Shown here: one piece after another, positions 1,855 through 32,576 of the stretch
Numbering within the stretch: position 1 is the first letter of the stretch
Layout: each line of letters starts with the position of its first letter
Assembly (NCBI RefSeq): GCF_006345805.1
Contig: NC_043011.1
Location: 13,466,464-13,530,463, forward strand
Direction: 5' to 3'
Length of the DNA: 64,000 bases
Source: Octopus sinensis
Taxonomy: Eukaryota
Translations under genes and position numbers: made by a program
The notes under the pieces: generated by a model
Database searches by the model: none
Seen by the model: only the letters and a program-made list of their open reading frames with translations
What the model was told of the DNA's origin: nothing

Positions 1855-2007
1855 CTGCACTAAAGTTTTGATGCTTTGTATTACATATTTTCCTTTAGCA
1901 GTTTCAGATGACAACATAACACAATCAATGCCATCTAAGACAGAATTAGCGACATCTCCTGCTTCAGCACGGGTAGGTCGAGGATGTATGGTCATACTCT
2001 CCAGCAT
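1855..2007 (-). CDS. PKM: PK-like exon 8 ([51 protein letters not shown])
   Basis: Acceptor tttaacctacAG, donor GTAAGG, 153 nt. Confidence 0.96.
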
Positions 2008-4134: not shown

Positions 4135-4197
<63 letters not shown>

Positions 4198-7100
4198 TAT
4201 TATATATTATATAAATATATATATTATATATACATATACATTATATACTATTGAAAAGGTTACAAGAAGCAACAAAAACTTCAGAAAAAATAAGTAAATG
4301 AGTGGAAAGTGAACCAGTGAGTGTGTTAAATAATAAGGCACTAAAAGAGAACGACTCTCCCCAGTCACAATAAAATATGCTTCAACACACAAACTCACAT
4401 AAAGAATCTTGCAAACTAAATAAAGATACATATATATTTGGAGCTGTTCTTCAAATTCAAGATGGCTGGACATCATTGGGAAAGATCCCCAGAGGCTGAA
4501 CATCACCTTGGAGGATGCAGAAGGGCTGCCACACTACCACCAGCAATAGAGACGAGTGGTGAATCTAGTTGGCTATACACATAATGACATCTTTGGGATC
4601 ACTAATCTGGGATGACCCAATTTCCATGAAGCAAGTGCATGAAAGAAGCAAGCAAGTATAGAAGTTTTAGTAGCACAAAGCTTGATTGCTGCTGTCATAA
4701 GTATGCATGGATAGTGGTATAAATACATAATTATAAAATATTATCAGAAATATATTATCATACAGTGAAATGATTGAAGTAAATTCATAGATCTACAGAC
4801 CTGGCTTGCACATGTAACAGATTTTCCGGCAATGTTAGCAAGACCAGTGATCATTTTCTGAGCTTTGAACAACTTTTCAGGTTTTATGCTAATGCCAAGA
4901 TTGCCTCGAGATATAATGATTCCATCTGATACAGAGATGATATCATTGATACTGGAAAACAGAAGGAAAAAAATTAGAACTTTAGTTTAACAAAAAATAA
5001 AATTGAAAAATGCTGTTAAAAGCTATAATCAACAGTGATAAAGTGTACTGACTTATAGATGAGATTTCAATTTTGACATGAATAAAATAATAGAAAGAAA
5101 AGAACAAATGTCACAGATATAAAAATGAACATAGTATTCTAGAGATCTACCAGTGATACATTCATGCATACATGTTTGCATATGGGCATGTGGTGAAGAA
5201 GTTTGCTTTAGAACCTTGTGTCACCAACACCCACCTACCCATTATACACTTCCCAACACACACACATACCCCACTATACTTCTATATTCACATATCTTTA
5301 TACCAACGTATATGTGAGTGTGTGTGCTTATATACATATATGTGACTGCGTGTGTATCATTCGCGATTTTTTTTCCTCCGTCTTCCCTTTCTTGGATCTT
5401 TCCTTTTCCTATGTTTCTGACTAAGAGCTCCACTTGAAACGTTAAACCCTCTTTCTTTCTTCCCTTTCCTGTGCGTCCAATAACACTATACTTGTTCCAC
5501 GTCCTCACATTGTTGTGTTTTCTCTTTGTGTTTTTGTGTTTGGATTAGCTATATATATAATAGATCAGGATTCAAGTGAATCAGGCACTTAAATGGTAAG
5601 GCACTGTGTTGGGTCAAAAACAGAGGAATACATATATGCAGGTACTTAAGTACAGGCAGAAAGATATTCAGGTTATGTATACAATTAACTGACTGAGTAT
5701 ATCAATAGCCCTGAGGCTAATCAAGAAACGCACATTGTAATAAATATATGGTCCATAATATGCTTCAGATCATAGTGGATTCATACTAGTTTTTGTAAGA
5801 ACTCAATTGTAACTCACAACTTGGAATAATGATCGTCAAGTTGGTCACTTTTCTGAATGATAGTATCTGGGTTACATATAAAAGCTGTATCTGAGTTGGT
5901 GAGTCCATAGCTAGTCTGTTGTCCTTGTAAGCAGGTTTGCTATTCATCAGTTGTCCTGCTGTCTCTCACTGTTTGGTCAAATACAGGCCATATCTGACCT
6001 GCAGTCCGTTACTTTTATGTCTGCAGTGAAATGGTCAGTAAGATGACCTACTATTCTGGACTACATCTAGTTGCCTCTTTCAGTCTGGGCTGCATGCTTA
6101 ACAACCACTGCAATCAATGCCAATTATCTATTTCTTTATTGCCCAAAGGAGGCTAAACATAGAGAGGACAAACAAGGACAGACAAAGCGATTAATTTGAT
6201 TACATCGGCCCCAGTGCCTAACTGGTACTTATTTAATTGACCCTGAAGGGATGAAAGGCAAAGTCGACCTCGGTGGAATTTGAACTCAGAACGTAACGGC
6301 AGCCGAAATACCTATTTCTTTACTACCCACAAGGGACTAAACACAGAGAGGACAAACAAGGACAGACAAACGGATTAAGTCGATTACATTGACCCCAGTG
6401 CGTAACTAGTACTTAATTTATCGACCCTGTAAGGATGAAAGGCAAAGTCGACCTCGGCGGAATTTGAACTCAGAACGTAATGGCAGCCGAAATACCGCTA
6501 GGCATTCCGACCAGCGTGCTAACGTTTCTGCCATGCCTTCTCTACTAATTCCATGCACATCCAGAATAGTTTACTTGACTGGTACCTTAATTCATTTACA
6601 AGAACAGACTGTGATCATCAAACACAAATCTAACAGTAAATACTCTCCTCTACTAAACATAGCTATCTCATGTTAAACCACACAATATATATGTTAGAGA
6701 AATTATTAAACACTTTACTAGCATAATCTGTTGTGTCTGGGGAGAGTCATTCTCTTTTAGTGCCTTATTATTTAACACACTCACTGGTAAAATTTCCACT
6801 TACTTTTTTATTTTTTATTTTCTAAAATTTTCATTGCGTGTTGCAATAAATAGTCAAGACTATTGAAAAGGTTGCAACACGCAACGAAAATTTTAGAAAA
6901 TAAAAAATAAGAAATAAGTGGAAATTTTACCGGTGAGTGTGTTAAATAATAAGGCACTAAAAGAGAATGACTCTCCCCGGACACAACAGAATATGCTTCA
7001 ACACACGAACTCATATAAAGAATCTTGCAAACCAAATCCAAAAACTAAATTACTAGCATAAGTTTGCTCAAAATTTTCCCCCCAAAATGCAACACACCCA

Positions 7101-10100
7101 GTTCAGTCATCTTTGGTCCAAAATATGTCTGTCATAAACTATAATGAATTTTAAACTTAACAAAAACAACAAATATCCAAGTTAATGAGAGAATGTCTAT
7201 ACAGTTGCTCAGTCTGGTAGAAATAACAGCCAAAAACCCTTCATATTACACTCAACCCTCTTAAATATCACAGTTATTGTAGTCATACATAGCTTCAAAA
7301 GCCATGTTGGCTGCAGTTGGAATACCTTTGATGGATCTTTTCGGTTTGAACGGCAGTTTTTTCTAGTGGTGTCATATGAAATTGTCACCCATAATTATGA
7401 CCCTAGTATAATTATTGCATTGTCACCCATAATTATGACCCTAGTCTAATTATTGCATTTCAATCTGTTTTAGGGTTATGGTTGGGGGGAAGGGTATCTT
7501 TTTTCTTCACAAATGTAAATAAACCTAATCTGTTTCTTAAACGAGGGACATATTCATACGGCACAGAATGTTTTTTTACCTCAATGGACGTCAGTGATTG
7601 GTTGAAATTGCAGAAATTGAAGAAAAAAACAACAACAAATATCTTACTAACTATAGAATTTTCTCAATAAAGCCAAGAGAAAAAGATGTTTTATAAACAC
7701 ATTCTACCAGTATACGAAGTTTAAAATTTTTTAGTTGTCTAGAAATTATGTTAAAAACTACCGTTCAAACCGAAAAGATCCCCTTGATCACATTTGCTCC
7801 TTCAGTAATTCTTTCATTTGGACTTTATGTTAAAAGAGATCACAATCCACCCTTATTCTAGCTTATCATACCCCTACCTATGTATTTCTATTTATTACTA
7901 ACAACCTCTGTTTACAAATAACAACAATCACAATAGACCCCTTTCATCAGTTCTGGAAAAAAAAAAGGGAGACCACATACTTCTTTACTCCTTTGTAGTT
8001 TTCAATTTTTGATATAATCTTTATAGATTTTCCTCTCTCTCTAAGAAAATCTCGTGCTAATTCGACAACTTTTCGATCACTAACGAGCGACATAAACACC
8101 ATGTCTACCTGGAAAGCAAAAGACAAAAACAAACATATTACAATCAACATGTGCATCCTAACATAAGATTAGTGGGTTCTGAGAAAAATTCTGGAATTGT
8201 AAGAGTAAGGTGGTCTATAAAATTTAACAAAATTTATAAAAAAATAAAATGTTATGGATCATTTTCAAAATAATAAGTTACTATATATAATTTTTTTTTA
8301 AATGAAGAAATACTTTTCCGAGCGAGGTTGTCCATAAAATAAGGGTTCAGTGAGTTTTAGAAAATTGTATAAGGGTTGGTTCCATGGCAAAATACATTTG
8401 ATAACCATTGATTTAGGACATCAGTAAGAATGTTTTGTCAAGTTGTTTTACAGAAATCAAAGCCTGGCATACTATGAAAAGTGAAATAATTTTCATTGTG
8501 AATTACAACAGGGACAATATGTTTCCTTCTTAGTGTAAACATGTGCAGGACACTATGTCATATAGTAAGTTTACACTATATATATATCATGACTTGTGAA
8601 CAAGTTGTTATTCATAGGTTTCACTGAGACAGCGGCAGGTATTTAGAAGGAAAATTTGACACTTGCTGACGATACACCGAAGAGGCCAGGGAACAGAAGA
8701 AAGAAGACACGCACCCAACACCAGAGCTGAAGACACCTCCAAAAGGTGGGGCCCCGCCACATCAAAACGGTAGAGAAGTAGGGGCCGAAACCGGACGTGG
8801 TTCCTCCTGATGATGTCTTGAGCTAACTGGCTCCTATAAAGGAGCTGTTGTGGTAACAGACCACGAAACACGGTTGTAATTTATATAGTGAACTTTATTT
8901 AACAGTACTGGTTTCTAGCCAATGTTTACATTTTTCACTGATATATATTGAAACAGAAAAAAACATACACTACTGCATAACATAAAAATACATAGGTGCA
9001 CAATACACACACAATGGATTTCTGCAGTCTCCTTCTACCAAAGGGGTTTTGGTAGAAAACACTTAGCCAAGGTGTTGTGTTATGGAAATGAACTGGGGTT
9101 AATGTGGTTGTGAGGCTTTATTGCTGGGGACATAAAGCTTTCTCTGAACAAACAGATGGCATAGAAGTAAGTATGTAAATATACTGGACATTACTATCTT
9201 GAGTCTCAGGAGTCACAGTGCTGGTTACTGGAGCAATTTGAAATGAAGCGTTTTATGCAAGAATATAACACACCACTCAGTCTGGGAAATGAAACAGTGA
9301 TCTTGCAGTCATGAGTGCAACACCCTAACCACTAGGCCATGAGCCTTCACGTAAACAAATAAACATAAAGATCTGAAAACCATGTGATTGGGAAGCAAAC
9401 TTTTGACCAGACAATCAAGCATTGGAAATCTTTACAATTTTCTTTCAGTTTTCTACGTTTTGGTACATACAAGTAAGAATGATTCACTGAGCTCTAATAA
9501 TGCCAAATTATATCCAGGGTGGTCACCTCTCCACTGCATGTCACAGGACAATTTTTTAATTGGATTACGTTGTATCCCTTACATTTCTGTTTTGACTGGA
9601 ATAACTTTTCTTTCTTATTTAATTAATTAAAAATTATTTTAGCTCATTAACATTATGGTATGTATTCTTTTTCAAGACACAATCAGATTTATTTAATATC
9701 CAAAAATATAGATAAAAATACAAAAAGAGGAACAAGGAAAGGAAAAGAAAGAAAAATGAAAGAAAAAAGAAAAGTGAAAGGGAAAAAACACATCAATTTA
9801 ACACCGCGTGTCTTAAGTGGTTGCACACGACAAGGTTCAATGGAACCTACTGAAGCAAGCCAACACACTCATGACATTACCACAGGCGATGGAGAGGCTA
9901 AGGCATTGGAACAGCCAAACACCCTCACAGGCATCACCTGACACCTTGGTAAGGCGAGCTGCCAACAATGACAAGAATTTCACCATTAGTAGCTCAGTTC
10001 CCCCTAATGTCTCAAACGCCACCAGCTGGAAGAAATGGTTCACTGACAGGTACCAATACTTAAGGATTTTGTTCAATTCAGCTATGGAAACAGTGACCCT

Positions 10101-12077
10101 CCCATTTAGCACAGCATCTAGAAGAGTCACAGACTGTGGTGTCCCAGATGAGGCTCCTACTTCTTACCCAGGGACAAAAGATAAGACTATCTGGTCTCTT
10201 CCCATCACTTCTGGATAATCCAGCTGGCTCCAGGGCTTGCTTAATAATTAAGTTTAGTTCGGTGTCATCATCATCATCATTTAACGTCCGCTTTCCATGC
10301 TAGCATGGGTTGGATGATTTGACTGAAGTCTGGCGAACCAGACTCCAATCTGATCTGGCAGAGTTTCTACAGCTGGATGCCCTTCCTAACGCCAACAACT
10401 CCAAGAATGTAGTGGGTGCTTTTACATGCCACCGGCACGAGGGCCAGTTTGGTGGTACTGGCAATGGCCATGCCCAAATGGTGCTTTTTACGTGCCACCT
10501 GCACAGGAGCCAGTCCAGCGGCACTGGCGACGACCTCGCTCGAATATTTCACATGCCACCGGCACAAGTGCTAGTAAGGTGACGCAGTAACGATCACGCT
10601 CGAATGGTGTGTTTTATGTGCCATCGGTACAAAGGCCAGCTCGTTGCTCTGGCAACGATCTCACTCGTAAGGTCGTTCTGAGCAAAATGACCAGCATTTA
10701 GGTGGCAAGACAGACCATGAAGAAGTGTGGAGTGGAGAGACCTACAACAGTGACACCTCAGTGCCCCACAGACGTCAGCTCCCACTCTGAGTGATGGAGA
10801 TGTGAGCTCATCTTGACTGAGTAGACCACCAATGTTGGCCACAGGCCAGAAGAATGGGAAACAAATAATCCCTTCCATTATAGGCAGAAGGCCTAAAATT
10901 CTGGGAGAGGGAGCTAATTGATACTCAACTGGTACTTATTTTATTGGTCCCAAAAGGAAGAAAGGTAAAGTCAACCGTGGCAGAATTTGAACTCAGAATG
11001 CAAAGACATGAAATGCTGCTAAGCATTTTGCCCAGTATGGTAATGATTCTGCCAGCTCCCCACCTAACAACAACAACAACAATAATAAAATAATCATCAA
11101 GAACAACAACAATATCTAATATAGGCATATGGCCTGAGATTTAGTGGAGGAAGGTAGTTGATCCTATCAACACTAATACTTGACTGGTATTTTCTTTTAT
11201 TAAGGCGGCGAGCTGGCAGAAACGTTAGCATGCCGGGCGAAATGCTTAGCGGTATTTCGTCTGCCGTTACGTTCTGTGTTCAAATTCCGCCGAGGTTGAC
11301 TTTGCCTTTCATCCTTTCGGGGTCGATAAATTAAGTACCAGTTACGCACTGGGGTCGATGTAATCGACTTATCCGTTTGTCTGTCCTTTCTGTGTTTAGC
11401 CCCTTGTGGGTAGTAAAGAAATAGAAATAGGTATTTCGTCTGCTGCTACGTTCTGAGTTCAAATTCCACTGAGGTCGACTTTGCCTTTCATTCTTTTGGG
11501 GTCGATAAAGTTACGCACTGGGGTCGATGTAATCGACTTAATCCGTTTGTCTGTCCTTGTTTGCCCTCTCTGTGTTTAGCCCCTTGTGGGTAGTAAAGAA
11601 ATAGAAATAGGTATTTCGTCTGCTGCTACGTTCTGAGTTCAAATTCCACTGAGGTCGACTTTGCCTTTCATTCTTTTGGGGTCGATAAAGTTACGCACTG
11701 GGGTCGATGTAATCGACTTAATCCGTTTGTCTGTCCTTGTTTGCCCTCTCTGTGTTTAGCCCCTTGTGGGTAGTAAAGAAATAAGTATTTTCTTTTATCA
11801 ATCCGGAAAGATGAAAGGCAAAATTAACAAAATAAAAGGCAATAATAATAGTTTGTGGCAGAAACTGTAACAGCAACAGGAATCAACCTCCCACAAAACT
11901 ACTCCCCCCCCCCTCCAACTCAGTTGACAGATCTTGTTTTGTAAGTTATTTGGTGACCTCTGCTGTTGTTGTGAGCCCACAAACACCTTGTAATCAGAAT
12001 ACACCGGAATGACCATGTTGTAATCTTGGAGTCACAATCAAGGCATGATGGGAATCCACATGAGTAATAATAATAAT

Positions 12078-12108
<31 letters not shown>

Positions 12109-12469
12109 TAGGAATGATAGCGAAAGGGGCTGATTGCTACCTAACGCAGATACCAGGAAACCCCAAAATGGCAGAAATTCAAAAGATAGTGCTCATGGGA
12201 ACTGCCCATATCCTACGCAAAATACTCTCTATGTAATCCCAAGGTTTAAAACAAATTTCTAATTTATTTATTAGACATTCACTAGTACAACACCAACCCC
12301 CACCCCAAATATATGGCACACTAGGCATAACAACAACATGAACTTCCAACCTGTTGTCTCTTGAGGTCTCTGGGTGAGACTTGGAGTCAACTTGTACAGA
12401 CATAAAGCAAAAGTCAAACATAGAATAATAATAATAATAATAACAATAATAATAATAATAATAATAATA

Positions 12470-12500
<31 letters not shown>

Positions 12501-15500
12501 GTGTATATTTCTAAGACAGTGACAATGTACAGGCAACTGCCTGGTTGGATTCTGAGATCAATCAGAACATTGAAAAATAAGACCATATTGATCTTATGAA
12601 TCAATATGGTTTTTTTGTCTAGGAAAAGTACTACAAAAAAAGACAGCCAGTACACTCTGTAAAGTGGTTGGCATTAGGAACAGCATCCAGCCATAATAAC
12701 CATTCCAAAGCAGACACTTGAGCTTGGTACAGTCCTCTGGCTTGCCAGCTCATGTCAAACAATCTGATCTGTGACAGCATGGAAAACAGATATTAAATGA
12801 TGATGATGATGATGATGATGTGTGTCTGCCTGTCTGCCTGTCTTTGTGTTTGCCCTCCACCACAGCATGACAACCAGTGTTAGTTTGTTTACATCTCTGT
12901 GGGATGTGTTGGTGGTTTGGCAAAAAGTGTACCACGCTTAAAAACAAGTACTGAGTTCGATATCCTTCTAGGATAGGTTGCAGACGGAAACAGGTAAAAG
13001 ATAAAACATAAAAAGCACCATCCGATCGTGACCGTTTGCAAGCGTCGCCTGGCACCTGTGCAGGTGGCACGTAAAAAGCACCCACTACACTCACGCAGTG
13101 GTTGGCATTAGGAAGGGCATCCAGCTGTAGAAACACTGCCAGATCAGACCGGGCCTGGCGCAGCCTTCTGGCTTCCCAGACCCCAGTTGAACCGTCCAAC
13201 CCATGCTAGCATGGAAAGCGGACGTTAAACGATGATGATGATGATGATGATACAAGATTAAAATGGTTTGCACCTTTTCGTCCAAAGCAAACTGCAGGTC
13301 GTTTTTATCATTGTCACTCAGTTCATACATGTCTGGCATCCCTTTCATGTGGCACGTCTGCCTGTTACCAAGAAGGCCCTCTTCAATAACTTCACAGATT
13401 AAGGTGGACTTCTGAAGCTGCAGTTCTGTTGGAAGAAAGAAAGCTTATGTAATGTTTTGGATTATCCCGTTTTACTAGGTTTTGATTACTATTTATATGA
13501 ATTTATACACAACTTTGAAAGTATTTATTATGAATACTGTACAGTAAGTGTATTGTAGTAAATATAGAGAAGATACAGTAAGTGTACTCTAGTGAAAATA
13601 GAGAAGGTACAGTAAGTGTACTCTAGTGAAAATAGAGAAGGTACAGTAAGTGTACTCTAGTGAAAATAGAGAAGATACAGTAAGTGTACTCTAGTGAAAA
13701 TAGAGAAGGTACAGTAAGTGTACTCTAGTGAAAATAGAGAAGATACAGTAAGTGTACTCTAGTGAAAATAGAGGAGGTACAGTAAGTGTATTCTAGTGGA
13801 AATAGAGGAGGTACAGTAAGTGTACTCTAGTGAAAATAGAGATGTACAGTAAGTGTACTCTAGTGGAAATAGAGGAGGTACAGTAAGTGTACTCTAGTGA
13901 AAATAGAGGAGGTTCAGTAAGTGTATTCTAGGGGAAATAGAAGAGGTACAGTAAGTGTATTCTAGTGAAAATAGAGGATGTACAGTAAGTGTACTCTAGT
14001 GGAAATAGAGGAGGTACAGTAAGTGTACTCTAGTGAAAATAGAGGAGGTACAGTAAGTGTACTCTAGTGAAAATAGAGGAGGTACAGTAAGTGTACTCTA
14101 GTGAAAATAGAGGAGGTACAGTAAGTGTACTCTAGTGAAAATAGAGGAGGTACAGTAAGTGTACTCTAGTGAAAATAGAGGTGGTAGAATAAGTGTATTG
14201 TAATGAACTTAGAGGAGGTACAGTAAGTGTACTCTAGTGAACACAGAAGAGGTATAAAAATTTTAAAAATTAAAAAATTGATGATTATAAAAATATAAGC
14301 ACAAACGTGGCTGTGTGGTAAGAAGTGTGTAGTAAGGTGGTGAGCTGGCAATCATTATATATCTATTATATAAAATCTGTTCTGGCTGTTTGTCTGTGTG
14401 TCTTCTAGGATCTTGGGCATCCCCCATCCGATTGTGCTCAAATTTGATATGTAGACACCGACGGTATCAGGGTGTGTATAAGTCTTGAAAAAATTACAAA
14501 AATAGATTCCAGGTGAGAATGCGATCGATAAAGCCGTGGGAACGTACATTTGTACATGCATCCGTCGATCCAATTACTGACCCAGAGCAAGTCATGGTGT
14601 ACCTGACTGAGTTTCTTAATTCACAAGAACCATTGGGTTTGCCACCCCATAAACTTTGCCTCAAGGTTGGAAGTCCCATTATTCTCCTCCGAAACTTGGA
14701 ATCCCCACGACTTTGTAATAACACTCGGTTGGTTCTCACTCAACTTTTGGATGACGTTCTCGAGGCAAAAGTTATCACAGGTCAAGGAGCAGGGGATGTT
14801 GTTTTTATTTCCTGCATGCCATTGATTCCGTCGGGCTGTGTTTACCCGATGAAACACATTCAATTCCCTATTCACATGAGCTTCGCGATGACTATCAACA
14901 AAGCACAGGGGTAGTCATTGAAAGTCGTGGGGTTGGACTTCAGCACTCCCTGCTTTTCGCACTGACAACTATTATATAAAATCTGTTCTGGCTGTTCGAG
15001 GGTTGACTGTTCAACAAACTTTTTCTACTACGCTGCAGATGGAATAACAAGGAATGTGGTTTACAAGGCTGCGCTCCACTAGTTTTTCCATGCCCTTGAA
15101 CATCCTGTAAAGTAAGTTAGCTTAAAATTAGTTACTTAGGTTGTTGCTTTTCATCAAAAATCACCCCAAGTTGATTTCCTACATGTTTTATTGGATAAAC
15201 TTATTATTGTCCCAGGTACGTTCTCATAAATTCATCATGCTTTTCCATCTAGATTTACCTCTAGCTAACCCATTTGCAGGCATCATTTTTGTTCTGCTTT
15301 TCTTCTGTCAACCTGTACATAATTGCACCTTCCATTTTTTGTTGTTTTTGTACTGCTTAAAGGCATGTTTCTTTCCTGCCAAGCTTACTGTTTAAACCAT
15401 GTTTGTGTTCTCCCAGTCAACAGCCTTATCATTACTGGTACTTTAAACTCTTTGGCTGCATATTTGTGCGAATAAAATCGTTTTTCTTTGGAATAGAAAA

Positions 15501-15670: not shown

Positions 15671-15704
<34 letters not shown>

Positions 15705-17199
15705 CATATATCTATGTGTATCTTTGTGTATGTGTTTGTAAATCCACCCTCCTTTCATCACTTGACCACTAGTGTTGGTGTATTTACATCCCCATAACTT
15801 AGTGGTTCATCAAAGAGGCCGATAGAATAAGTACAACCCACCCACCCACCCACCCACCCACTGTACCCCACCATAAAACCATAATATACATTAAAAGAAA
15901 ACACAAACCTTTATCTACAACCATAAGTGAAAGAGGTCCATCCTCAATGACAATGATACTGTCAACCTTAGCATAGTCAATAAGTTTCTGCTGATCTATA
16001 TACAGGAAGCTATCATCCATATTGTTGATGTTTTCTGAGTCATAGCTGATTCGTACGACTGATCGATGTTTAAAGAATATTTCTCTTCCAAGTTCCTGAA
16101 TTTAAAAGAAATCAGTAGAACTAATGAATTATTTACAATTTTCTTCAGTTTCTGAAATATGTGAATGGTTACATATTTTCTGTAATCAGAACATAAATAA
16201 AATAAGTAGCCTAGGCTAGTCAATATTTTTATTGTTATCTATTTTCCAGTTTTATATCTATACCATATCTTCCTATTTATTTTACACAACCTTGCACATT
16301 CTTTGTGTTATTACTTAAACAAATGAAAACATAGGTATTGGGTAAATCACTAAGAAACACATTTAATCCCTCTTATGCCTCACTTTTCTCTCAATGCAGT
16401 TGTGCTTTATTGGTCATGCACACTGATGTTGCAAATCCAATGGAGCATACTACCTTCATTCCTCTTCAGTCTATGCATGTCCTCTATATTCACAGCCCGT
16501 GACTAATATAGCAACGTAATATATATATATGGATCTTTTCCTTTTGAATGGCAGTTTTCAACAAAATTTGTAGTTAACTAAACACTTTTAAACTTCGTAT
16601 ACTGGTAGAATGTGTCAAAATAAAACATTTTTTTCTCTTGGCTTTCTTGAGAAAATTGTAATTTGTAAGTTTAACGTAGTTTAATTTTTCGAATTTTAAC
16701 CAATCAATGGCCTCTATTGAGCTAAAATCATTTGCTGCGTCTAAAACTGAGACAACATCCTGTCACTAACCCTAACCCTTTCATTTTTTTTTCTTAATTG
16801 TTAAATTAAAATTATTTTCCATTGCTTTCATTTTAGCCTTTTGTTTTTCTTTTCTTAATTGTTATCCTTAAATTAATTAATATAAGTGGCTATATTTATA
16901 TTGAAGTGATTTTACTACTACTACTACTACTATTTTTACAATAATCATTTCTTAAATATAGCAACGAAACACATGTCGTTATTCTACCAAATATATACGA
17001 TTTATTTATTATTTTGCACATTACTTAATCATCTGTATCTTTTTTATCTTATATTTAATATTTCTATTATATGTAATTTTCTAGATGGTGTAATTTAATT
17101 TTTCATTTTAAATTGATAAAAGGTGGGTTTTCTAATTTATATATATATATATATGCGTGTGTGTGTGTATTCACATATATATATGTATATGTATACATT

Positions 17200-17249
<50 letters not shown>

Positions 17250-20200
17250 CACACATATATCCATATACATATATATAAATATACAGATTAGAAAATTACT
17301 ATTTTTAAATCTCACAACATGAGATACTCAGCAACAGCACTTTGTAGTAAAGATTGTGTGCCAACACAACATGGCAGTCCCGGCCTAGGAGCAATGTTGC
17401 CGCAATTCAGCCCCAGGAGACATCATCTCCAGCCGGCTGTACGACACAATCTTTGTCCTTATATTTTCGAACAAGGGAAGCTAGCACCCCCACTCAGCTC
17501 AAAACAATATCTGTGTATCGCGATTTCTGGGTTATTTTCGTTCATCAGCATAGAATATTTGTTCAGCTAGAGGTGGCGCTGCCTAATTTGCATTCGAAAA
17601 TATAAGGACACAGATCGCGTCATACACTTTCGGAAACATTTTTTCACGCTCAGGGTTGCTGAAGCGTGGAATAAACTGCCTGCATCAGTTGTTGACTGCC
17701 ATGACACTGCATCCTTTAAGGCCCTCATGCTTCCCGAAATCTGTCGAAACTACACCTGATTATATATACACTTTAGATGAGTTGTAGTGCACCTGAGCAC
17801 TGTACACAATTATTGTTATTATTATTAAACTCACTGGCTCAATTGTTCTACATTCACAGAAAGGGGATTCCACATTATTGTCCCATTTCACATGGATTTG
17901 GCGAGTGTTTCCTAATCTATTTTCCCCAGGCTCCACTATAACTTTCCAGAAAAATATAGGCTCCCACCAGTGGCTGGAAAAATGTATAGGTGTAGTATGT
18001 TTGCTGTGCAAAAAAGATTTTCACAATTCTATGTCCCACTAAAAAATTTTGGATCTCAATCTTCCCAGGCCCCACATCGGGAATCACTGGATTAGGCCAA
18101 ATCCAACACAAATTTGATTCAGATATTTCCGTTGTTCCAAACCCTTTGACAATCTCACCATGACTGCTGTTAGAAATATACTGTGAATTGGGTTAACATT
18201 ACTTTGGCAACGGGTAGTGTCAGAGCTATGTCGTCGGGAACTTTGGTTTCCTGGTAGGGCCACCCAAGGCGGATTGGTCTGACACCGAGTGGTATTAGGG
18301 CCACAACCTGGTGAAAATCCTCGGAGTGTCTGTTTCGGCAACCGGTGGCTCCTCAGTCGTTCTGTGCCTGCGTCTGCAGACAATCTGCAGCAAACAGGAT
18401 GTCTCTACATGCAGTTGTTGGGAACCGCTTGTGAAATCCACATATTCCCACGAAACTTCTTCCATGAATTCTCAATGCTCCGAGGGTGATAGAAGAAGCC
18501 GACTCAACCCACCCAGGGTGAATGTTGCCACAAGTACAAGTACATAGAGTAAGTAACATTACTTTCAGCCTTTCATTCTTTTAGAATGGTAAGAGTTGTA
18601 CTGGCATCACTATTTTGTGTAGTGATTGTTATTCATTTATAGCAATGAAACAAATCTAATAAAATTCTGAGAATTGTAGATTATCATGTTGTCTTTGAGT
18701 GAAGATTTGGTCAGCAAAATTGAATTATAAATAATATTTTCTCGATAATGCTTTCACAATGAAAGAGAATTTAACCAATGAGGGAGCAACTATGCTGTCA
18801 CTTAATCTACTAGAAATAACAGCTGAATTAAGGCGGTGAGATGGCAGAAACGTTAGCACGCTGGACGAAATACTTAGGGGTATTTTGTTCATCGCTACGA
18901 TCTGAGTTCAAATTCCGCCGAGGTCGACTTTACCTTTCATCCTTTCGGGGTCGATAAATTAAGTACCAGTTACGCACTGGGGTAGATGTAATCAACTTAA
19001 TCCGTCTGTCCGTCCTTGTTTGTCCCCTCTATGTTTAGCCCCTTGTGGGCAATGAAAAAAAAAAAAGAAATAACAGCTGAATCCCCATCAGATCACATTT
19101 CACTATTTTAGAAACCTGGGAAAAAGATGGAAAGTCCCAAATGGAAAATGTTTTTGATCATAGATTTGCCTATGTTGACTTAGGGGTGAACCAATAACAA
19201 TAGCTGGCGCATACTCTCTCTCTCTTTCTCTCTCTCATACTCTCACACACATGCATAAAAACATGAGTAAAATCCTTTATGCATTATTTAGTGATTTATA
19301 TCTGAATACGTACAATGAGTAAATTATTACATTCAGTAGAGTGTAGCAAATCCCAAACAAACTTACCGGTTTAAGCTTGCCGAGTCTGACCTCTGGCCCA
19401 GCAATGTCAATGGCAATACCGACTGGGGAATGATTCGTTAGCAACTCGTTAGAAACTTGGCGGATATTCGTTATAAATCTGCTGTGATACTATAACAAAA
19501 AGTTTTAAATATTTAATTAATATTTAATTATATATCGGAGTGGTTGGCGTTAGGAAGGGCATCCAGCTGTAGAAACATTGCCAGATAAGACCGGAGCCTG
19601 GTGCAGCCTTCTGGCTTCCCAGATCCTCGGTCGAACCGTCCAACACATGCTAGCATGGAGAACGGACGTTAAACGATGATGATGATAATGATGACATCAG
19701 AAAAATTTGGTAGTTATCAACAATACATAATTATCATTTACATGCCTTCAACTGCAGTATAAAGTCTGCCATAAAATATCAGCTTTTTATTTGCAGTTGT
19801 TGTTGTTGTCACAAACTATTGCACTATAATAGTTTAAACTAAATACTTACCATACAAACTTCATGTTTATTATTTTTGCTCTAATCTAAATACTAGCAGC
19901 CATACCCAGCCTTAACTGGCTTTATTAATCCCTAAAAAGAATATAATCTCATGAAAAAGTGCCACACCCTAGCAGTTGAGGGAACCTGTGGAAGAGGCAG
20001 ACCAAGGAAAACCTGGGACGAGGTGGTGAAGCACGACCTTCGAACTTTAGGTCTCACCGAGGAAATGACTAGTGACTGAGACCTTTGGAAGTATGCTGTG
20101 CATGAGAAGACCCAGCAGGACAAGTGAGACCATAACCTGTGGCCTCTACATGGGATGTAGCCAGTCCACTTATGCATACTTTTCCTTCTTGGGACACAAA

Positions 20201-26011: not shown

Positions 26012-26064
<53 letters not shown>

Positions 26065-27214: not shown

Positions 27215-27300
<86 letters not shown>

Positions 27301-30067: not shown

Positions 30068-30104
<37 letters not shown>

Positions 30105-32576
30105 TACGACAGGCTTCTTTCAGTTTCCGTCTACCAAATCCACTCACAAGGCATTGGTCAGCCTGGGGCTATATCAGAAGACACTTGCCCAAGATGCCAC
30201 GCAGTGGGACTGAACCCGGAACCATGTGGTTGGTTAGCAAGCTACTTACCACGTTCACATTTTCTACATCAAATGATGTAGGTGTAGAATTTGGGATTGA
30301 AAAGTATACTATATTGGTAATGAAAGAAGGAAGATTTGAAAAGATCCAGGAAATTGAAATGCCAAATGGATAAACAATAAAAAAACAGTTGAGAAAGGAC
30401 AGTGTGATAAGTATTTGGGAATACAGCAGGCAGATGAAATAAAACATGAAGAAATGAAATGAACTACACATAGGAAAGTGAAGAAATATTACAGTCAAAC
30501 AGTGACATACAGGAACTTAACAGAAAAAACTAGAAAGCTGTTGGCAATGTATGGAGCCCACCATCCAAAAGGTGATATTTATCAGCTGTACTTGAAGAGA
30601 GACCAGAGTGAAAGAGGCTTAACGGCTGAGGAAGAGTGTGTACAGACAGAAAGAAAATGCCTACTAGAATATCTAGAGAACACAAAGAAATTACTAAAGG
30701 CAGTGGATAAAGAACAGGTGATCAGTTTGGAATGAGAGAAAAGGATAAAAATGAAATTCAAGAGAGCAGACTGAAGAGAAACCTTTGCATGGTCAGTTTT
30801 GGAAAGCCATTGAGGATGTATGTGGAACAACCTGGGCTTGGTTTAAAAATGAGCAGTTAAAAAAAGAAACATAGGGCCTTATAATAACAGTTCAAGATCA
30901 AGTGTTGAAATCAAACAACTCAAGAAAATACGTGTATGGGTAGAAGGTGTCAGCAAAATGTGAAAGTTTGGGTTGAAGGTGTCAGCAAAAGGTGAAAGTT
31001 TGGGTTGAAGGTGTTAGCAAAATGTGAAAGTTTGGGTCAAAGGTGTCAGCAAAATGTGGAAGCTTTGTCAGAAACTGGGATTTAAAACTGGAAGTGCTTG
31101 GTGTGATCATTAGGTTGAAAGAGTGTTTGAGTTGGAGAATGCAAGAATTTATAGAATTTTCCCATTCAAACAGATAAGAAGCTAGAAAATAATAAACCAG
31201 ACATAAGTGTAATAGACAAGGAAAAGCGAATTGCTTACTAATTGATCCATCATGTCCATTCAATTCCAGGATTGTAACGAAAGAGGAAGAAAAATGAAAA
31301 AAAAATACAATCCCATAAAATTTGAAATTGTGAGAATTTGGAGTATGATGGAAACTGTAAAGATTGAGCCTGTAATAATTGGTAATAATTAGGGAACTGT
31401 GAATAATGCTACAGACAAATGGTTGAAGGAGAGTGGAACAGAATGTCCTGTAGAGCTTCTACGGAAAGTTTGCCTCTTAGGGACAGGGAAGATTATCAGA
31501 AGGGTTTTGAGCCCTTGAAAGATTATTGAAAGCTTGTGGATGTCTAAGGTGACTTGCTACCCACATAAATTCTACGAGGAATAATAATAACAAAGCTGAC
31601 TCAAAATTAGCAACAACAACAACAGCAAGAAGAAGAAGAAGAAGAAGAAGAAGAAGAAGAAGAAGAAGAAGAAGAAGAAGAAGAAGAAGAAGAAGAAGAA
31701 GAAGAAGAAGAAGAAGAAGAAGAAGAAGAAGAAGAAGAAGAAGAAGAAGAAGAAGAAGAAGAAGAAGAAGAAGAAGAAATCCAGCAACAACAACAACAAC
31801 AACAACAAGCATCTACAGCATCCCAAAAAGTGATTTCCAGAAATGTTTCCACTAGTGGCAGGAACACTGGCAGAAGTGTGTAGACTCCCAAAGCAAATTC
31901 TTTGAAGGAGACTAAATCAAAGTGGTGAGTTTTTTTAATTTTACTTGTTTTTTGGTCAAAGGTCGGATACTTTTTGACTACAACACATATATGGCAGATT
32001 TCTTGTACAGTTTCCATCTACCAAATATCACACACAAAACATCAATTAACCAGAGTCTGTTGTACATGACCCTTACCCAACATTATCAATTCTTGAATTT
32101 AAAAACTATCTGTGATAATAACTAGAGCACATTTACTTTCGTTTGTTTTCACTATTTTGATTGATAATATGGTGATTTTGGTACTAAATTGACATTGCTT
32201 CCTTTACAATGCAAATGTTTTTGGGAAAAGAATTCCAAGTGCTTCTCTAGAAATCTGAAACTTTCTAAGAAATCTTTTATTTTAAATCATAATCTATTTG
32301 TTAATTCTTATGTTAAATCATCCAAATTAGATAGTTAATTGTAAAAGGTGAAGTGATTTATTATTTTTGTCGAAAATTCTTGCTACAAAAAAGAAGGAAC
32401 ATGGTTTTCAAAAACAAAATAAATGGAAAATTGTACTCACCTACAGTAGCTATGATGCTGGTCATATGCGGCATCTTTACCTGAGGTGTATCAATATCCA
32501 AGGAACAAAGGTGTTCCAAGAAGGAATATTCCTTCTCTTCCGAAAACCCCTTTGACTGTGTTATAGCATCAACCAT
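1855..32576 (-). CDS. PKM: Pyruvate kinase-like gene, 8 coding exons, 3'-partial (375 aa in window), divergent active site
   Basis: Exons 32576-32441, 23966-23872, 19489-19367, 16095-15909, 13425-13274, 8108-7981, 4951-4801 and 2007-1855 join in frame (1125 nt). All introns are GT-AG. PK motifs seen: [58 protein letters not shown]. Confidence 0.95.
2141..2574. mobile_element. MITE with GGATCTTTTCGGTTTGAAC TIRs, internal TTAGGG-like repeats and a 9-bp TSD
   Basis: TIRs at both ends; TSD gtgttgtag at 2132-2140 and 2575-2583. Confidence 0.85.
2585..4112 (+). pseudogene. Degenerate 5'-truncated RTE LINE (RT domain to C-terminus)
   Basis: Frameshifted motifs [45 protein letters not shown] and [16 protein letters not shown]. 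Confidence 0.85.
4801..4951 (-). CDS. PKM: PK-like exon 7 ([51 protein letters not shown])
   Basis: Acceptor ttctgttttccAG, donor GTCTGT, 151 nt; aligns to [26 protein letters not shown]. Confidence 0.95.
5345..5560 (+). mobile_element. Short Penelope-type element with a decayed minimal hammerhead, ending at a (TA)n tract
   Basis: gtttCTGACTAagagctccacttGAAACGTTaaac at 5413-5447; a reverse-orientation partial copy of its tail lies at about 45350-45450. Confidence 0.55.
6130..6532 (-). mobile_element. Family B SINE with tandem-duplicated 3' unit
   Basis: Two consecutive copies of the ~180-bp body (6130-6310 and 6311-6490) followed by the head. Confidence 0.8.
6728..7040. repeat. Foldback element: ~118-bp inverted arms (6728-6989) plus a unique tail
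   Basis: ctgttgtgtctggggagagtc...ttgcaa / ttgcaacacg...gactctccccggacacaacag. Family members at about 4245-4425 and 35555-35790. Confidence 0.85.
7333..7781. mobile_element. GGATCTTTTC-TIR MITE, copy 2
   Basis: Same TIRs and body as 2141-2574; imperfect TSD cctttgat/ccttgat; short internal tandem duplication at about 7381-7460. Confidence 0.85.
7981..8108 (-). CDS. PKM: PK-like exon 6 ([42 protein letters not shown])
   Basis: Acceptor tttgctttccAG, donor GTATGT, 128 nt; KIISKIEN motif. Confidence 0.95.
8666..8878 (+). ncRNA. Cluster of hammerhead-ribozyme-like cores (probable Penelope-associated relic)
   Basis: CTGACGA at 8666, CTGAAGA at 8727 with CGAAAC at 8786, CTGATGA at 8807 with CGAAAC at 8864, and stem-II pairings. 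Stem I is poorly supported. Confidence 0.4.
9790..10880 (-). pseudogene. CRE-clade non-LTR retrotransposon 3' fragment (Zn knuckle + RLE), split by an RTE-tail insertion at 10263-10683
   Basis: [15 protein letters not shown]...[13 protein letters not shown] | [26 protein letters not shown]...WD...[11 protein letters not shown]...[13 protein letters not shown]. Confidence 0.8.
11201..11784 (+). mobile_element. Family B SINE, head plus three 3' units, 14-bp TSD
   Basis: TSD gtattttcttttat at 11187-11200 and 11785-11798; 11401-11580 is identical to 11581-11760. Confidence 0.9.
12110..12424 (+). pseudogene. R4/Dong-type LINE 3' end embedded in (AAT)n
   Basis: [41 protein letters not shown] plus 3'UTR, with (AAT)n arrays on both sides. 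Confidence 0.75.
13274..13425 (-). CDS. PKM: PK-like exon 5 ([51 protein letters not shown])
   Basis: Acceptor tctttcttccaacAG is the only one of the nearby AGs that keeps the frame; donor GTGCAA; 152 nt. Confidence 0.85.
13539..14240. repeat. 34-bp minisatellite, about 20 copies (gtacagtaagtgtactctagtgaaaatagaggag)
   Basis: Directly visible tandem array; 34-nt period confirmed at 14048/14082. Confidence 0.95.
14362..15670 (+). mobile_element. Helitron (5'-TC, 3' hairpin + CTCG, A/T target) carrying a degenerate PIF1 helicase C-terminal fragment at about 14561-15082
   Basis: [41 protein letters not shown]...[14 protein letters not shown]; hairpin ccgtcca-t-tggacgg. Same termini as 58190-58623. 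Confidence 0.85.
15909..16095 (-). CDS. PKM: PK-like exon 4, B/lid domain ([19 protein letters not shown]...[16 protein letters not shown])
   Basis: Acceptor tttaaattcAG, donor GTTTGT, 187 nt; aligns to KIYVDDGLISLQVKQK. Confidence 0.9.
17590..17826 (+). pseudogene. CR1-type LINE 3' end with (ATT)n tail
   Basis: [24 protein letters not shown]...SFKALM motif followed by 3'UTR and attattatta. Confidence 0.75.
19367..19489 (-). CDS. PKM: PK-like exon 3 ([41 protein letters not shown])
   Basis: Acceptor ttttgttatAG, donor GTAAGT, 123 nt, phase 0/0; aligns to PVAVALDTKGPEIRTG. Confidence 0.93.
19953..20661 (+). mobile_element. 5'-truncated RTE LINE (ORF C-terminus plus ~530-bp 3'UTR)
   Basis: [34 protein letters not shown], stop at about 20125, tail ending gatgatgaa. 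Confidence 0.85.
21479..21780 (-). mobile_element. tRNA-derived SINE, family C
   Basis: Reverse complement of tgtggaggcatatggcctagtggttagagcagtggg...gggtttgaatctc...gaaggaacaaac. Confidence 0.85.
22602..22995 (+). mobile_element. tRNA-derived SINE, family A, full length
   Basis: ggcgcaggagtggctgtgtggtaag...gggttcagtcccactg...gactgaaacaagtaaaaagag. Confidence 0.85.
23480..23782 (+). mobile_element. tRNA-derived SINE, family C, 12-bp TSD
   Basis: TSD acagtagagctg at 23468-23479 and 23783-23794; A/B-box-like head. Confidence 0.9.
23872..23966 (-). CDS. PKM: PK-like exon 2 ([32 protein letters not shown])
   Basis: Acceptor cctaaacAG, donor GTAAGT, 95 nt; aligns to [28 protein letters not shown]. 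Confidence 0.93.
24815..26340 (-). pseudogene. Degenerate APE-type LINE (Jockey/I/L2-like group), RT to poly-A tail
   Basis: Fragments [33 protein letters not shown]; A-rich tail near 24820-24850; (AG)n insert at about 26012-26060. Confidence 0.65.
26350..26571. mobile_element. piggyBac-like MITE (TTAA-CCC...GGG-TTAA)
   Basis: ttaa|ccctttc ... gaaaggg|ttaa; a related one-ended relic ends near 830. Confidence 0.7.
27011..30252 (-). mobile_element. Family A SINE split in its (TA)n middle by an RTE insertion
   Basis: 3' half at 27011-27230 and 5' half at 30100-30252, both flanked by (TA)n. Confidence 0.8.
27298..30062 (-). mobile_element. 5'-truncated RTE LINE with a 3'UTR expanded by higher-order tandem duplication
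   Basis: ORF end [12 protein letters not shown]...[17 protein letters not shown] stops at 29769; six copies of the cacttgcctc(a/g)..ggtcttcacaag block; (CAT)n tail at 27298-27320. Confidence 0.9.
31627..31779. repeat. (GAA)n microsatellite, about 50 units
   Basis: Directly visible. Confidence 0.98.
32441..32576 (-). CDS. PKM: PK-like coding exon 1 ([46 protein letters not shown])
   Basis: ATG at 32576; phase-1 donor G|GTGAGT. An acceptor-like ttttatttttccAG at 32627-32640 implies an upstream non-coding exon. Confidence 0.9.

What the first reader, a model, noticed from the sequence alone, without database searches (positions are those of the whole stretch)
1855..32576. Intact, intron-conserved pyruvate kinase paralogue with a systematically degenerate active site (candidate pseudo-enzyme)
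Seen: 8 exons splice into an uninterrupted 375-aa frame with canonical splice sites despite TE-riddled introns. Numbered against human PKM from memory, the protein keeps R73, D113, E118, R120, S243, K270, E272, R294, G295, S362 and E364. It changes N75V, S77A, H78Y, T114I, K115A, K207Q, N210H, F244L, A293S, D296N, T328S and G363S. Established: E272/D296 bind the catalytic divalent cation, N75/S77/D113/T114 bind K+, H78/R120/K207 contact the nucleotide, and T328 takes part in enolpyruvate protonation. Inference: the gene is under selection for fold but probably not for normal PK catalysis. It may be a scaffold, a regulatory heterotetramer subunit or a tissue-specific structural protein, comparable to the divergent testis-biased Pyk paralogues of Drosophila.
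Basis: partly seen in the sequence, partly recalled or inferred. Interest (0 to 1): 0.82.

Follow-up and report, generated by a model that had tools for sequence, protein, structure and literature searches.

The report
Conserved degenerate pyruvate kinase paralogue in octopus
The window holds the first eight exons of an Octopus sinensis gene that is an old, well-conserved copy of pyruvate kinase with about half of its key active-site residues replaced; it sits next to a normal pyruvate kinase gene, so it is probably a non-catalytic or re-purposed "pseudo-enzyme", a known kind of thing not yet described for molluscs.

Summary
Eight minus-strand exons (1855-32576), all AG...GT, splice into a 375-codon open frame. 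All 23 residue calls are right: 12 of 25 catalytic or ligand sites differ, and canonical PKs from fish to fungi almost never vary at those sites.

The 375 aa are only the N-terminal 70% of a 536-aa protein, O. sinensis XP_029645964, annotated "pyruvate kinase PKM". Exons 9-11 lie beyond window position 1.

- A fully canonical PK gene (0/25 changes in Argonauta) lies tail-to-tail just downstream in Argonauta and O. sinensis, with identical intron phases.
- dN/dS is 0.25 between two Octopus species and ≤0.1 at greater depth.

Spliced full-length mRNA occurs in at least 24, probably about 87, Sepia esculenta RNA-seq assemblies; two checked runs are hatchling larvae, so expression is not testis-only.

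The 12 replacements are identical in all five cephalopod orthologues. Gastropods carry related copies with different knock-outs (R73C, E272Q), so the lineage probably predates the cephalopod-gastropod split.

Most likely this is a folded PK-like protein without normal PK catalysis and with a conserved, remodelled cleft. Its function is only inferred. It is a new member of a known kind, like the Drosophila Pyk-like pseudoenzymes.

The parts
32441..32576 (-). Coding exon 1 (ATG at 32576; residues 1-45, phase-1 end); N-terminal segment '[17 protein letters not shown]...IIATVG'
   Evidence: identical to P0001
23872..23966 (-). Coding exon 2. Holds R67 (human R73) at 23904-23902, V69 (N75V) at 23898-23896, A71 (S77A) at 23892-23890 and Y72 (H78Y) at 23889-23887. 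Two of the three side-chain ligands of the K+ site are lost, as is a nucleotide contact.
19367..19489 (-). Coding exon 3. Motif '[10 protein letters not shown]': D105 (D113), I106 (T114I), A107 (K115A), E110 (E118 kept), R112 (R120 kept).
15909..16095 (-). Coding exon 4 (B-domain, first part); 187 nt, the same length and phase as in the canonical paralogue
13274..13425 (-). Coding exon 5 (B-domain end). '[11 protein letters not shown]': Q203 (K207Q) at 13360-13358 and H206 (N210H) at 13351-13349. Has a 3-4 residue insertion relative to canonical PK.
7981..8108 (-). Coding exon 6. S238/L239 (S243, F244L), K265 (catalytic K270 kept) at 8009-8007, E267 (Mg ligand E272 kept) at 8003-8001. The donor is AA|GTATGT (phase 2).
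4801..4951 (-). Coding exon 7. 'SRGNLG': S288 (A293S), R289, G290, N291 (Mg ligand D296N) at 4902-4900. S323 (T328S) at 4806-4804.
1855..2007 (-). Coding exon 8. 'MLESM...PRPTRAE...MLSSETAKG': S357, S358 (G363S), E359. Ends at CAG|GTAAGG, so the gene continues.
1..1854 (-). First 1.85 kb of intron 8. Exons 9-11 (C-terminal domain, residues 376-536) lie 0.7-5.5 kb beyond window position 1. The 3' end of the canonical PK gene lies about 12 kb beyond it.
   Evidence: window 1-42576 is the exact reverse complement of L015 1-42576

Best explanation
The window carries exons 1-8 of the Octopus sinensis gene for XP_029645964, which public records call 'pyruvate kinase PKM'.

It is an old DNA-level duplicate of the canonical pyruvate kinase gene. 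In cephalopods the canonical gene still lies tail-to-tail beside it.

The protein keeps the full PK fold (A, B and C domains) and the phosphate-handling residues R73, D113, E118, R120, K270 and E272. It has lost two of the three side-chain ligands of the K+ site (N75V, S77A), one of the two Mg2+ ligands (D296N) and nucleotide contacts (H78Y, K207Q).

My best reading is that it no longer catalyses PEP + ADP -> pyruvate + ATP at a useful rate. I think it is kept for a non-catalytic or re-purposed role that still uses the remodelled cleft, either by binding a phospho- or carboxy-metabolite or by acting as a regulatory partner of canonical PK.

Shown: the gene structure, paralogy, conservation, selection, transcription and predicted fold. 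Inferred: the loss of catalysis and everything about the role.
For: Gene model and residues.

Identity: 100% to O. sinensis XP_029645964. The window is an exact match to chromosome CM016873.1.

A canonical paralogue exists:
- Argonauta P0361 has 0/25 sites changed and lies 1.9 kb downstream on the opposite strand.
- O. sinensis has a 582-aa PK gene 6.5 kb downstream on the opposite strand, with the same distinctive distal last exon.
- Sepia esculenta expresses both a canonical PK (P0341) and the divergent one (P0003).

DNA-level duplication: all 10 introns of the divergent gene have the same phases (1,0,0,1,0,2,0,0,2,1) as the canonical Argonauta gene, and six exon lengths are identical.

Selection:
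- O. sinensis vs O. bimaculoides gives dN 0.034, dS 0.135, dN/dS 0.25 (Fisher p = 1e-9).
- Deeper pairs give ≤0.11, with dS saturated.
- Intact 533-538-aa ORFs are present in Octopus (3 species), Argonauta, Sepia and a second decapodiform.

Constraint on the new cleft: all 25 sites, including the 12 replaced ones, are invariant in five cephalopods. Only 56% of all aligned columns are invariant. Hypergeometric p is 3e-7 for the 25 and 9e-4 for the 12.

Early loss of catalysis: gastropod members of the same clade carry different lethal-looking changes. Haliotis has R73C, E118A/G, R120H and D296N. Lottia and Patella have E272Q and E118G.

The clade has 94% NJ bootstrap support and shares derived states such as F76M, T114I, D177E, G232A, V233L and C317A.

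Fold: AF2 pLDDT 88.6, pTM 0.88; Foldseek TM about 0.9 to PKM2.

Residue roles (K+ ligands N75, S77, D113 and the T114 carbonyl; Mg2+ ligands E272 and D296; K270 at the transferring phosphate; T328 as proton donor) are established knowledge from rabbit and human PK crystal structures, quoted from my own memory. PMC11973853 confirms only that N75, H78, D113, T114, R120 and T328 are active-site residues.
Against: - There are no enzymatic data.
- Several core catalytic residues survive (K270, E272, R73, R120). T328S is conservative, and Asn at 296 can still ligate Mg2+, so residual or altered catalysis is possible.
- The strict conservation of the replacement residues fits a changed enzyme as well as it fits a ligand-binding pseudoenzyme.
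- No evidence bears on partners or oligomeric state.
- Expression in Octopus itself was not shown. The 90% cluster of the octopus protein has only genome-annotation members.
- The grouping of mollusc copies (and flatworm ones) in the NJ tree could be inflated by long-branch attraction.
Confidence: 0.6

Rival explanations
1. It is still an enzyme, but with changed chemistry or cofactor needs. Candidates are a K+-independent reaction that needs only the divalent metal and the enolate site, such as oxaloacetate decarboxylation or enolpyruvate ketonisation, or phosphotransfer with another donor or acceptor.
For: K270, E272, R73, R120, D113, E118, S243, R294, G295, S362 and E364 are kept, and T328S is conservative. 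The 12 replacement residues are invariant over the whole cephalopod radiation, as expected for a working site. PK is known (own knowledge) to decarboxylate oxaloacetate without K+ or nucleotide.
Against: N75 and S77 are kept even in the bacterial K+-independent type (the 'DLQKR' signatures), so their loss is outside the known functional range. Gastropod clade members destroy other essentials (R73C, E272Q, R120H), which argues that catalysis was already dispensable in the common ancestor. D296N weakens metal binding.
Confidence: 0.22
2. It is a testis- or sperm-specific structural or regulatory PK-like protein, like the Drosophila Pyk-like genes.
For: Drosophila has six PK genes. Pyk and Pykl1 are adjacent, and most non-canonical paralogues of carbohydrate enzymes are predicted inactive and testis-restricted (PMC11836677). 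The octopus pair is likewise adjacent.
Against: The Sepia esculenta orthologue is assembled full length from whole newly hatched larvae (SRR19578109, SRR25114245). The index lists it in 87 blocks of the collection; 24 contigs were read and all carried it. That is not a testis-only pattern. Tissue data for Octopus were not available.
Confidence: 0.1
3. It is an ordinary, catalytically normal PK isozyme, and the substitutions are tolerated.
For: Public annotation calls it 'pyruvate kinase PKM'. The fold is intact.
Against: 92 of 120 hits have none of the 25 sites changed, and the other canonical PKs from animals, fungi and protists have at most two changed or missing sites, apart from one hit (P0070) with four. 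The canonical mollusc PKs have none changed. This protein has 12, including ligands of both metals. It also changes 62 of 185 columns that are ≥90% conserved in canonical PKs, against 0-16 for canonical sequences.
Confidence: 0.04
4. It is a young pseudogene that happens to keep an open frame.
For: None beyond the degenerate site.
Against: Intact ORFs and conserved introns are present in lineages separated since the octopod-decapodiform split. dN/dS is 0.25 or lower, and spliced mRNAs exist.
Confidence: 0.01

Closest known systems
Canonical animal pyruvate kinase (human PKM/PKLR; the cephalopod canonical PK P0361/P0341)
   Same: Same domain architecture (PF00224 + PF02887) and same predicted fold (TM about 0.9). 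Same intron positions and phases as the neighbouring canonical gene. Keeps K270, E272, R73, R120, D113, E118 and the PRPTRAE and MLSxET motifs.
   Different: 39.5% identity to the canonical PK of Argonauta, while that canonical PK is 61.5% identical to human PKM. 12 of 25 catalytic or ligand sites are replaced. The K+ site and one Mg2+ ligand are lost. Non-synonymous rate is about 3.5-fold higher (dN 0.253 vs 0.072 for Argonauta-Sepia). R489 of the FBP pocket is replaced by Gly or Ser.
Drosophila Pyk-like (Pykl) pseudoenzyme paralogues (PMC11836677)
   Same: Paralogues of the glycolytic PK that coexist with a canonical gene. They are predicted inactive through loss of active-site residues. One lies directly adjacent to the canonical gene, consistent with tandem duplication.
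   Different: Orthology to the fly genes was not tested, and no fly Pyk-like sequence was in my trees. I assume an independent origin because the octopus copy falls in a mollusc-specific clade. The fly genes are testis-restricted, whereas the cuttlefish orthologue is expressed in whole hatchlings. The mollusc lineage appears much older (shared by cephalopods and gastropods).
Gastropod 'PKM-like' degenerate PKs (Haliotis, Lottia, Patella, Gigantopelta, Pomacea)
   Same: They group with the cephalopod copy (94% NJ bootstrap). They share derived states F76M, S77A/V, L112I, T114I/L, K115x, D177E, K207x, N210H, G232A, V233L, F244L/W and C317A.
   Different: Only about 41-45% identical. They knock out other residues (R73C, E118A/G, R120H in Haliotis; E272Q in patellogastropods) but keep N75. 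No canonical PK lies within 10 kb in Lottia or Gigantopelta.
K+-independent pyruvate kinases (bacterial/archaeal type, Lys at rabbit position 117)
   Same: Hydrophobic residue at 114 and loss of Lys115, as in the 'D-L-Q-K-R' type.
   Different: The defining E118K replacement (rabbit position 117) is absent, as Glu is kept. N75 and S77, which that type retains, are lost here.

Membership tests
Pyruvate kinase family (Pfam PF00224 barrel + PF02887 C-terminal domain) | Significant match to the PK barrel domain model | tested here: met
   PF00224 at 2.8e-92, 309.7 bits against a cut-off of 30; covers 3-328 of 328 profile positions
Pyruvate kinase family (Pfam PF00224 barrel + PF02887 C-terminal domain) | PK C-terminal (alpha/beta) domain present | tested here: met
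   Not in the window. The full-length product P0001 (100% identical over the 375 aa) carries PF02887. Exons 9-11 were located in L015.
Pyruvate kinase family (Pfam PF00224 barrel + PF02887 C-terminal domain) | PK three-dimensional fold | tested here: met
   AF2 mean pLDDT 88.6, pTM 0.88. Best Foldseek hits are PKM2 chains with TM 0.88-0.94 and rmsd about 2 Å. This is a predicted structure, not a solved one.
Catalytically competent pyruvate kinase (EC 2.7.1.40) | Monovalent-cation site: N75, S77, D113, T114 (or the Lys replacing E118, rabbit 117, in the K+-independent type) | tested here: not met
   N75V, S77A and T114I; E118 is kept, so there is no internal Lys substitute
Catalytically competent pyruvate kinase (EC 2.7.1.40) | Divalent-cation ligands E272 and D296 | tested here: not met
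   E272 is kept. D296 is Asn in all five cephalopod orthologues.
Catalytically competent pyruvate kinase (EC 2.7.1.40) | Phosphoryl-transfer and PEP residues R73, R120, K270 and T328 | tested here: inconclusive
   R73, R120 and K270 are kept. T328 is Ser, a conservative change whose effect is unknown.
Catalytically competent pyruvate kinase (EC 2.7.1.40) | Nucleotide contacts H78 and K207 | tested here: not met
   H78Y and K207Q
Catalytically competent pyruvate kinase (EC 2.7.1.40) | Measured PK activity | not testable with these tools
   Needs recombinant protein and an LDH-coupled assay
Pseudoenzyme paralogue of a metabolic enzyme (as Drosophila Pykl) | A canonical, intact paralogue coexists in the same genome | tested here: met
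   Argonauta P0361 (0/25 changes) is adjacent. O. sinensis has an adjacent 582-aa PK gene. Sepia esculenta has both P0341 and P0003. The O. sinensis neighbour's own active-site exons were not read.
Pseudoenzyme paralogue of a metabolic enzyme (as Drosophila Pykl) | Retained under purifying selection and expressed (not a pseudogene) | tested here: met
   dN/dS 0.25 (p = 1e-9) and ≤0.11 for deeper pairs. Spliced full-length mRNA was found on all 24 Sepia RNA-seq contigs read; the index lists the protein in 87 blocks.
Pseudoenzyme paralogue of a metabolic enzyme (as Drosophila Pykl) | Testis-restricted expression (typical of the fly genes, not defining for pseudoenzymes) | tested here: inconclusive
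   Present in whole hatchling-larva RNA-seq of Sepia esculenta, which argues against strict testis restriction. No tissue panel could be examined.
Mollusc degenerate-PK clade (cephalopod + gastropod 'PKM-like') | Shared derived residues at columns ≥90% conserved in canonical PKs (F76M, T114I/L, D177E, G232A, V233L, C317A, N210H), and monophyly | tested here: met
   Column table. NJ bootstrap 94% for the clade. Long-branch attraction is not excluded, and no ML tree was possible with the tools on hand.

The most novel reading that the evidence does not exclude
Molluscs, and possibly spiralians as a whole given that the flatworm degenerate PKs group with them, have kept a PK-derived non-catalytic protein since about the Cambrian. 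Its remodelled cleft would work as a metabolite sensor, or the protein would act as a regulatory subunit of canonical PK. In cephalopods it has remained physically linked to the canonical gene. That would be a previously unrecognised, ancient layer of glycolytic control in a major animal phylum.
Probability: 0.25. Interest if true: 0.7.

Novelty: new member of a known kind. Interest (0 to 1): 0.55.

Why it matters
- Public databases label this gene and its mollusc relatives as ordinary 'pyruvate kinase PKM(-like)'. Transcriptomic, proteomic and metabolic studies of cephalopods and gastropods can therefore count a probably inactive protein as glycolytic capacity.
- Recognising a conserved PK-like pseudoenzyme clade gives a clean natural experiment on what a PK fold does once catalysis is lost. 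Different lineages carry different knock-outs, and cephalopods have a frozen, conserved alternative cleft.
- It extends the pattern seen in Drosophila (pseudoenzyme paralogues of glycolytic enzymes) to another phylum, without the testis-only expression.
- It is not a new kind of system, and the function is still unknown.

Tried and rejected
- First homologue search: it returned no canonical mollusc PK at all, so on its own it could not settle whether this is the only PK gene.
- 96-aa fragment of the Argonauta neighbour's last exons as query: it returned only short fragments and wasted one capped search.
- Chimeric query (octopus protein with the neighbour's C-terminal exons grafted on): this did recover the canonical Argonauta PK and many canonical mollusc PKs.
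- Synteny in gastropods: there is no PK neighbour within 10 kb in Gigantopelta or Lottia, and the Haliotis protein was not on record. Ancient adjacency could therefore not be shown outside cephalopods.
- K+-independent PK: considered and rejected because Glu118 is kept.
- Retrogene origin: rejected because all introns are shared with the canonical gene.
- Literature searches for a description of this gene, its accessions or mollusc PK pseudoenzymes found nothing.
- SRA accessions could be tied to species and tissue for only a few runs. The species of P0004 (SRR24189493), P0067 (SRR34486202/204) and P0156 remain unknown.
- Deep-pair dN/dS values are only bounds, because dS is saturated.
- I did not obtain the O. 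sinensis canonical protein sequence itself, only its last exon, its position and its Pfam content.

Full report
**1. What is in the window**

A tblastn of human PKM against the window gave eight collinear minus-strand matches and nothing else PK-like. Its numbering to residue 376 was checked against PDB PKM chains.

Reading the boundaries by eye and assembling them gives these exons: 32576-32441, 23966-23872, 19489-19367, 16095-15909, 13425-13274, 8108-7981, 4951-4801 and 2007-1855.
- Each intron starts with GT and ends with AG.
- The sum is 1125 nt, which translates to 375 codons with no stop.
- The exon 6/7 junction looked at first like a frameshift. It resolves with the donor AA|GTATGT in phase 2.
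- The coordinates and the length are exactly those of the finding.

The product hits Pfam PF00224 at 2.8e-92 and PKM structures at about 1e-88.

The last exon ends at a donor site, so the 375 aa are a truncated view.
- The window is an exact reverse-complement match to Octopus sinensis chromosome CM016873.1 over the 42,576 bases where the window and the fetched locus L015 overlap.
- The full gene has 11 coding exons and encodes 536 aa, accession XP_029645964 / XP_036365390, named 'pyruvate kinase PKM'.
- Exons 9-11, which encode the C-terminal domain, lie beyond window position 1.

**2. The residue pattern is real and exceptional**

I aligned the 120 best database hits and read 25 catalytic or ligand columns.
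- 92 of the 120 hits match human PKM at all 25 sites.
- The other canonical PKs (fish, nematodes, flatworms, an insect, a sponge, fungi and protists) have at most two changed or missing sites, apart from one hit (P0070) with four.
- It keeps R73, D113, E118, R120, S243, K270, E272, R294, G295, S362 and E364.
- Codon positions are given.

More widely, it changes 62 of 185 columns that are ≥90% conserved in canonical PKs. Canonical sequences change 0-16 of them.

The residue roles are established knowledge from PK crystal structures, quoted from my own memory:
- K+ is bound by N75, S77, D113 and the T114 carbonyl.
- Mg2+ is bound by E272 and D296.
- K270 sits at the transferring phosphate.
- T328 is the proton donor.
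- H78, R120 and K207 contact the nucleotide.

The one paper I read only confirms that N75, H78, D113, T114, R120 and T328 are active-site residues (PMC11973853).

**3. It is a paralogue, and the canonical gene is next door**

The first search returned no canonical mollusc PK, so I looked at the flanks.
- In Argonauta hians a second PK gene lies 1.9 kb downstream on the opposite strand.
- In O. sinensis a 582-aa PK gene lies 6.5 kb downstream on the opposite strand, about 12 kb outside the window.

A chimeric query recovered the Argonauta neighbour (P0361, 569 aa), two further cephalopod canonical PKs (P0341, P0342) and many canonical mollusc PKs. All of them have 0/25 sites changed.

The O. 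sinensis neighbour shares the distinctive distal last exon of P0361. I did not read its active-site exons.

P0341 comes from Sepia esculenta RNA-seq (SRR20545806, PMC9538352), as does the divergent P0003 (SRR19578109, PMC10141105; SRR25114245, PMC10442824). One species therefore expresses both genes.

The divergent and canonical Argonauta genes share all ten intron phases (1,0,0,1,0,2,0,0,2,1). Six exon lengths are identical: 187, 128, 151, 153, 167 and 119 nt. This points to a DNA-level duplication, not a retrocopy.

The refutation criterion 'this is the only PK gene' therefore fails.

**4. It is conserved and expressed**

Orthologues:

| Species | Protein | Identity over the 375 aa in the window |
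|---|---|---|
| O. vulgaris | P0121 | same ≥90% cluster (not measured over this span) |
| O. bimaculoides | P0122 | same ≥90% cluster (92.5% over the full length) |
| Argonauta hians | P0002 | 79% |
| Sepia esculenta | P0003 | 67% |
| A second decapodiform | P0004 | 67% |
| Acanthosepion pharaonis | P0016 (fragment) | 55% |

Nei-Gojobori estimates on CDSs that I rebuilt from the genomic loci and transcripts:
- O. sinensis vs O. bimaculoides: dN 0.034, dS 0.135, dN/dS 0.25. That is 41.5 non-synonymous changes in 1257 sites against 43.5 synonymous changes in 351 sites (Fisher p = 1e-9).
- Deeper pairs give 0.05-0.11, with dS saturated.
- For Argonauta vs Sepia, the divergent gene has dN 0.253 (66.7% identity) and the canonical gene has dN 0.072 (89% identity).
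- The copy therefore evolves about 3.5 times faster than the canonical gene but is clearly constrained.

The cuttlefish mRNA appears as an uninterrupted 1602-nt ORF on 2.5-3.6-kb contigs. The index lists the protein in 87 blocks of the collection; the 24 contigs read all carried it. The runs include whole newly hatched larvae.

The refutation criterion 'dN/dS near 1 with no expression' also fails.

**5. The cleft is frozen in its new state in cephalopods and knocked out differently in gastropods**

All 25 sites are invariant across five cephalopod orthologues, while only 56% of aligned columns are invariant. The hypergeometric p is 3e-7 for all 25 sites and 9e-4 for the 12 replaced ones.

The best non-cephalopod relatives are gastropod 'PKM-like' proteins, with 7-12 of the 25 sites changed (the lowest count is from the partial Pomacea sequence):
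- Haliotis: R73C, S77A, T114I, E118A/G, R120H, D296N, T328S.
- Lottia and Patella: S77V, T114I, E118G, E272Q, T328A.
- Gigantopelta, Pomacea and two unnamed transcripts also belong here.

They form one clade with the cephalopod copy in NJ trees, with 94% bootstrap. Canonical cephalopod PKs meanwhile sit with canonical mollusc PKs. The two groups share derived states at otherwise conserved columns: F76M, L112I, T114I, D177E, G232A, V233L and C317A.

My inference is that the duplication predates the cephalopod-gastropod split, which I date to the Cambrian from my own knowledge. PK catalysis was probably already dispensable in the ancestor, because each lineage has destroyed different essential residues. 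The protein was nevertheless kept.

Long-branch attraction remains a caveat, and no ML tree was possible with the tools on hand.

**6. Fold**

AlphaFold2 with a 48-sequence alignment gives mean pLDDT 88.6 and pTM 0.88. All three domains are ordered. Foldseek places the model on PKM2 chains with TM 0.88-0.94 and rmsd about 2 Å.

**7. How it most likely works**

Shown: an intact, selected, transcribed PK-fold protein that coexists with a canonical PK.

Inferred, at about 0.6: normal phosphotransfer is lost because the K+ site, one Mg2+ ligand and the nucleotide contacts are gone. The protein would then be kept for a role that still depends on the remodelled cleft or on PK-PK contacts. R342 and K305, which I recall to be A-A' interface residues, are retained (alignment).

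Rivals:
- An enzyme with altered chemistry (0.22).
- A testis- or sperm-specific role (0.10).
- A normal isozyme (0.04).
- A pseudogene (0.01).

**8. Comparison and novelty**

The closest known analogues are the Drosophila Pyk-like pseudoenzymes. One of them is adjacent to the canonical Pyk gene, and most such fly paralogues are testis-specific (PMC11836677).

The octopus gene is a PK family member by domain and fold. It fails the tests for a competent PK at the cation and nucleotide sites. It is not the K+-independent type, because Glu118 is kept.

I found no paper describing this gene or a mollusc PK pseudoenzyme. Databases call it plain PKM.

I therefore file it as a new member of a known kind. 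It is of moderate interest, mainly for annotation hygiene and as an old, well-conserved example of a glycolytic pseudoenzyme.

Noticed in passing
outside the window: L014 36047-35898 and 31001-30819 (Argonauta); L015 54801-54661 (O. sinensis): The canonical cephalopod PK gene has two alternative last coding exons. One is canonical ('...VTGWKSGSGFTNTLRIINAP'). The other is a divergent distal one ('...DKRIYRGIGAGLELN...GSVQHTNEGND...'), which is used in the annotated 569- and 582-aa products. The swap replaces the FBP-loop part of the C domain. It is an isoform switch reminiscent of PKM1/M2, but at a different exon.
   Followed up: partly
P0169, P0179, P0221, P0254 (Paragonimus, Cichlidogyrus, Spirometra, Echinococcus): Parasitic flatworms have their own clade of degenerate PK-like proteins, with 12-14 of 25 sites changed. 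Three of them were in the NJ tree and group with the mollusc degenerate clade at 100% bootstrap. This is either a spiralian-wide old paralogue or long-branch attraction.
   Followed up: partly
(top 150 representatives of 50%-identity clusters): About a quarter of the nearest PK-family cluster representatives carry seven or more changes at the 25 sites. Degenerate PK paralogues therefore seem common across eukaryotes. Separately, the bacterial K+-independent signature 'DLQKR' is easy to recognise.
   Followed up: no
window 50288-51214 (-): Mariner/Mos1-type transposase remnant (HTH_48 + Transposase_1), upstream of the PK-like gene.
   Followed up: partly
window 54009-56566 (-): LTR-retroelement ORFs: a gag-like ORF, zinc knuckle + aspartyl protease, and integrase. 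No reverse-transcriptase ORF lies between them, so the element looks incomplete. It was not reconstructed.
   Followed up: partly
window 14513-14914 (+), intron 4: Pif1-type helicase 2B-domain fragment, probably a Helitron remnant.
   Followed up: partly
window 13539-14254; 27465-27860; 31627-31778; 34055-34692; 6128-6496, 11251-11783, 46718-47276: Repeats: a 34-bp x21 satellite; a 62/125-bp array inside a wider GC-rich repeated block of about 27.3-29.7 kb (extent judged from repeated ORF translations); (AAG)50; (TCCG)n x160; and three tandem arrays of a ~180-184-bp unit that I take to be SINE-like (unverified). The ORF list also shows a recurring peptide-like motif ('[13 protein letters not shown]...') from an element scattered through the introns.
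   Followed up: no
P0121, P0123-P0125 (O. vulgaris): The O. vulgaris annotation lists four isoforms of the orthologue (431, 480, 536 and 545 aa). This suggests alternative splicing or transcript evidence in that species.
   Followed up: no
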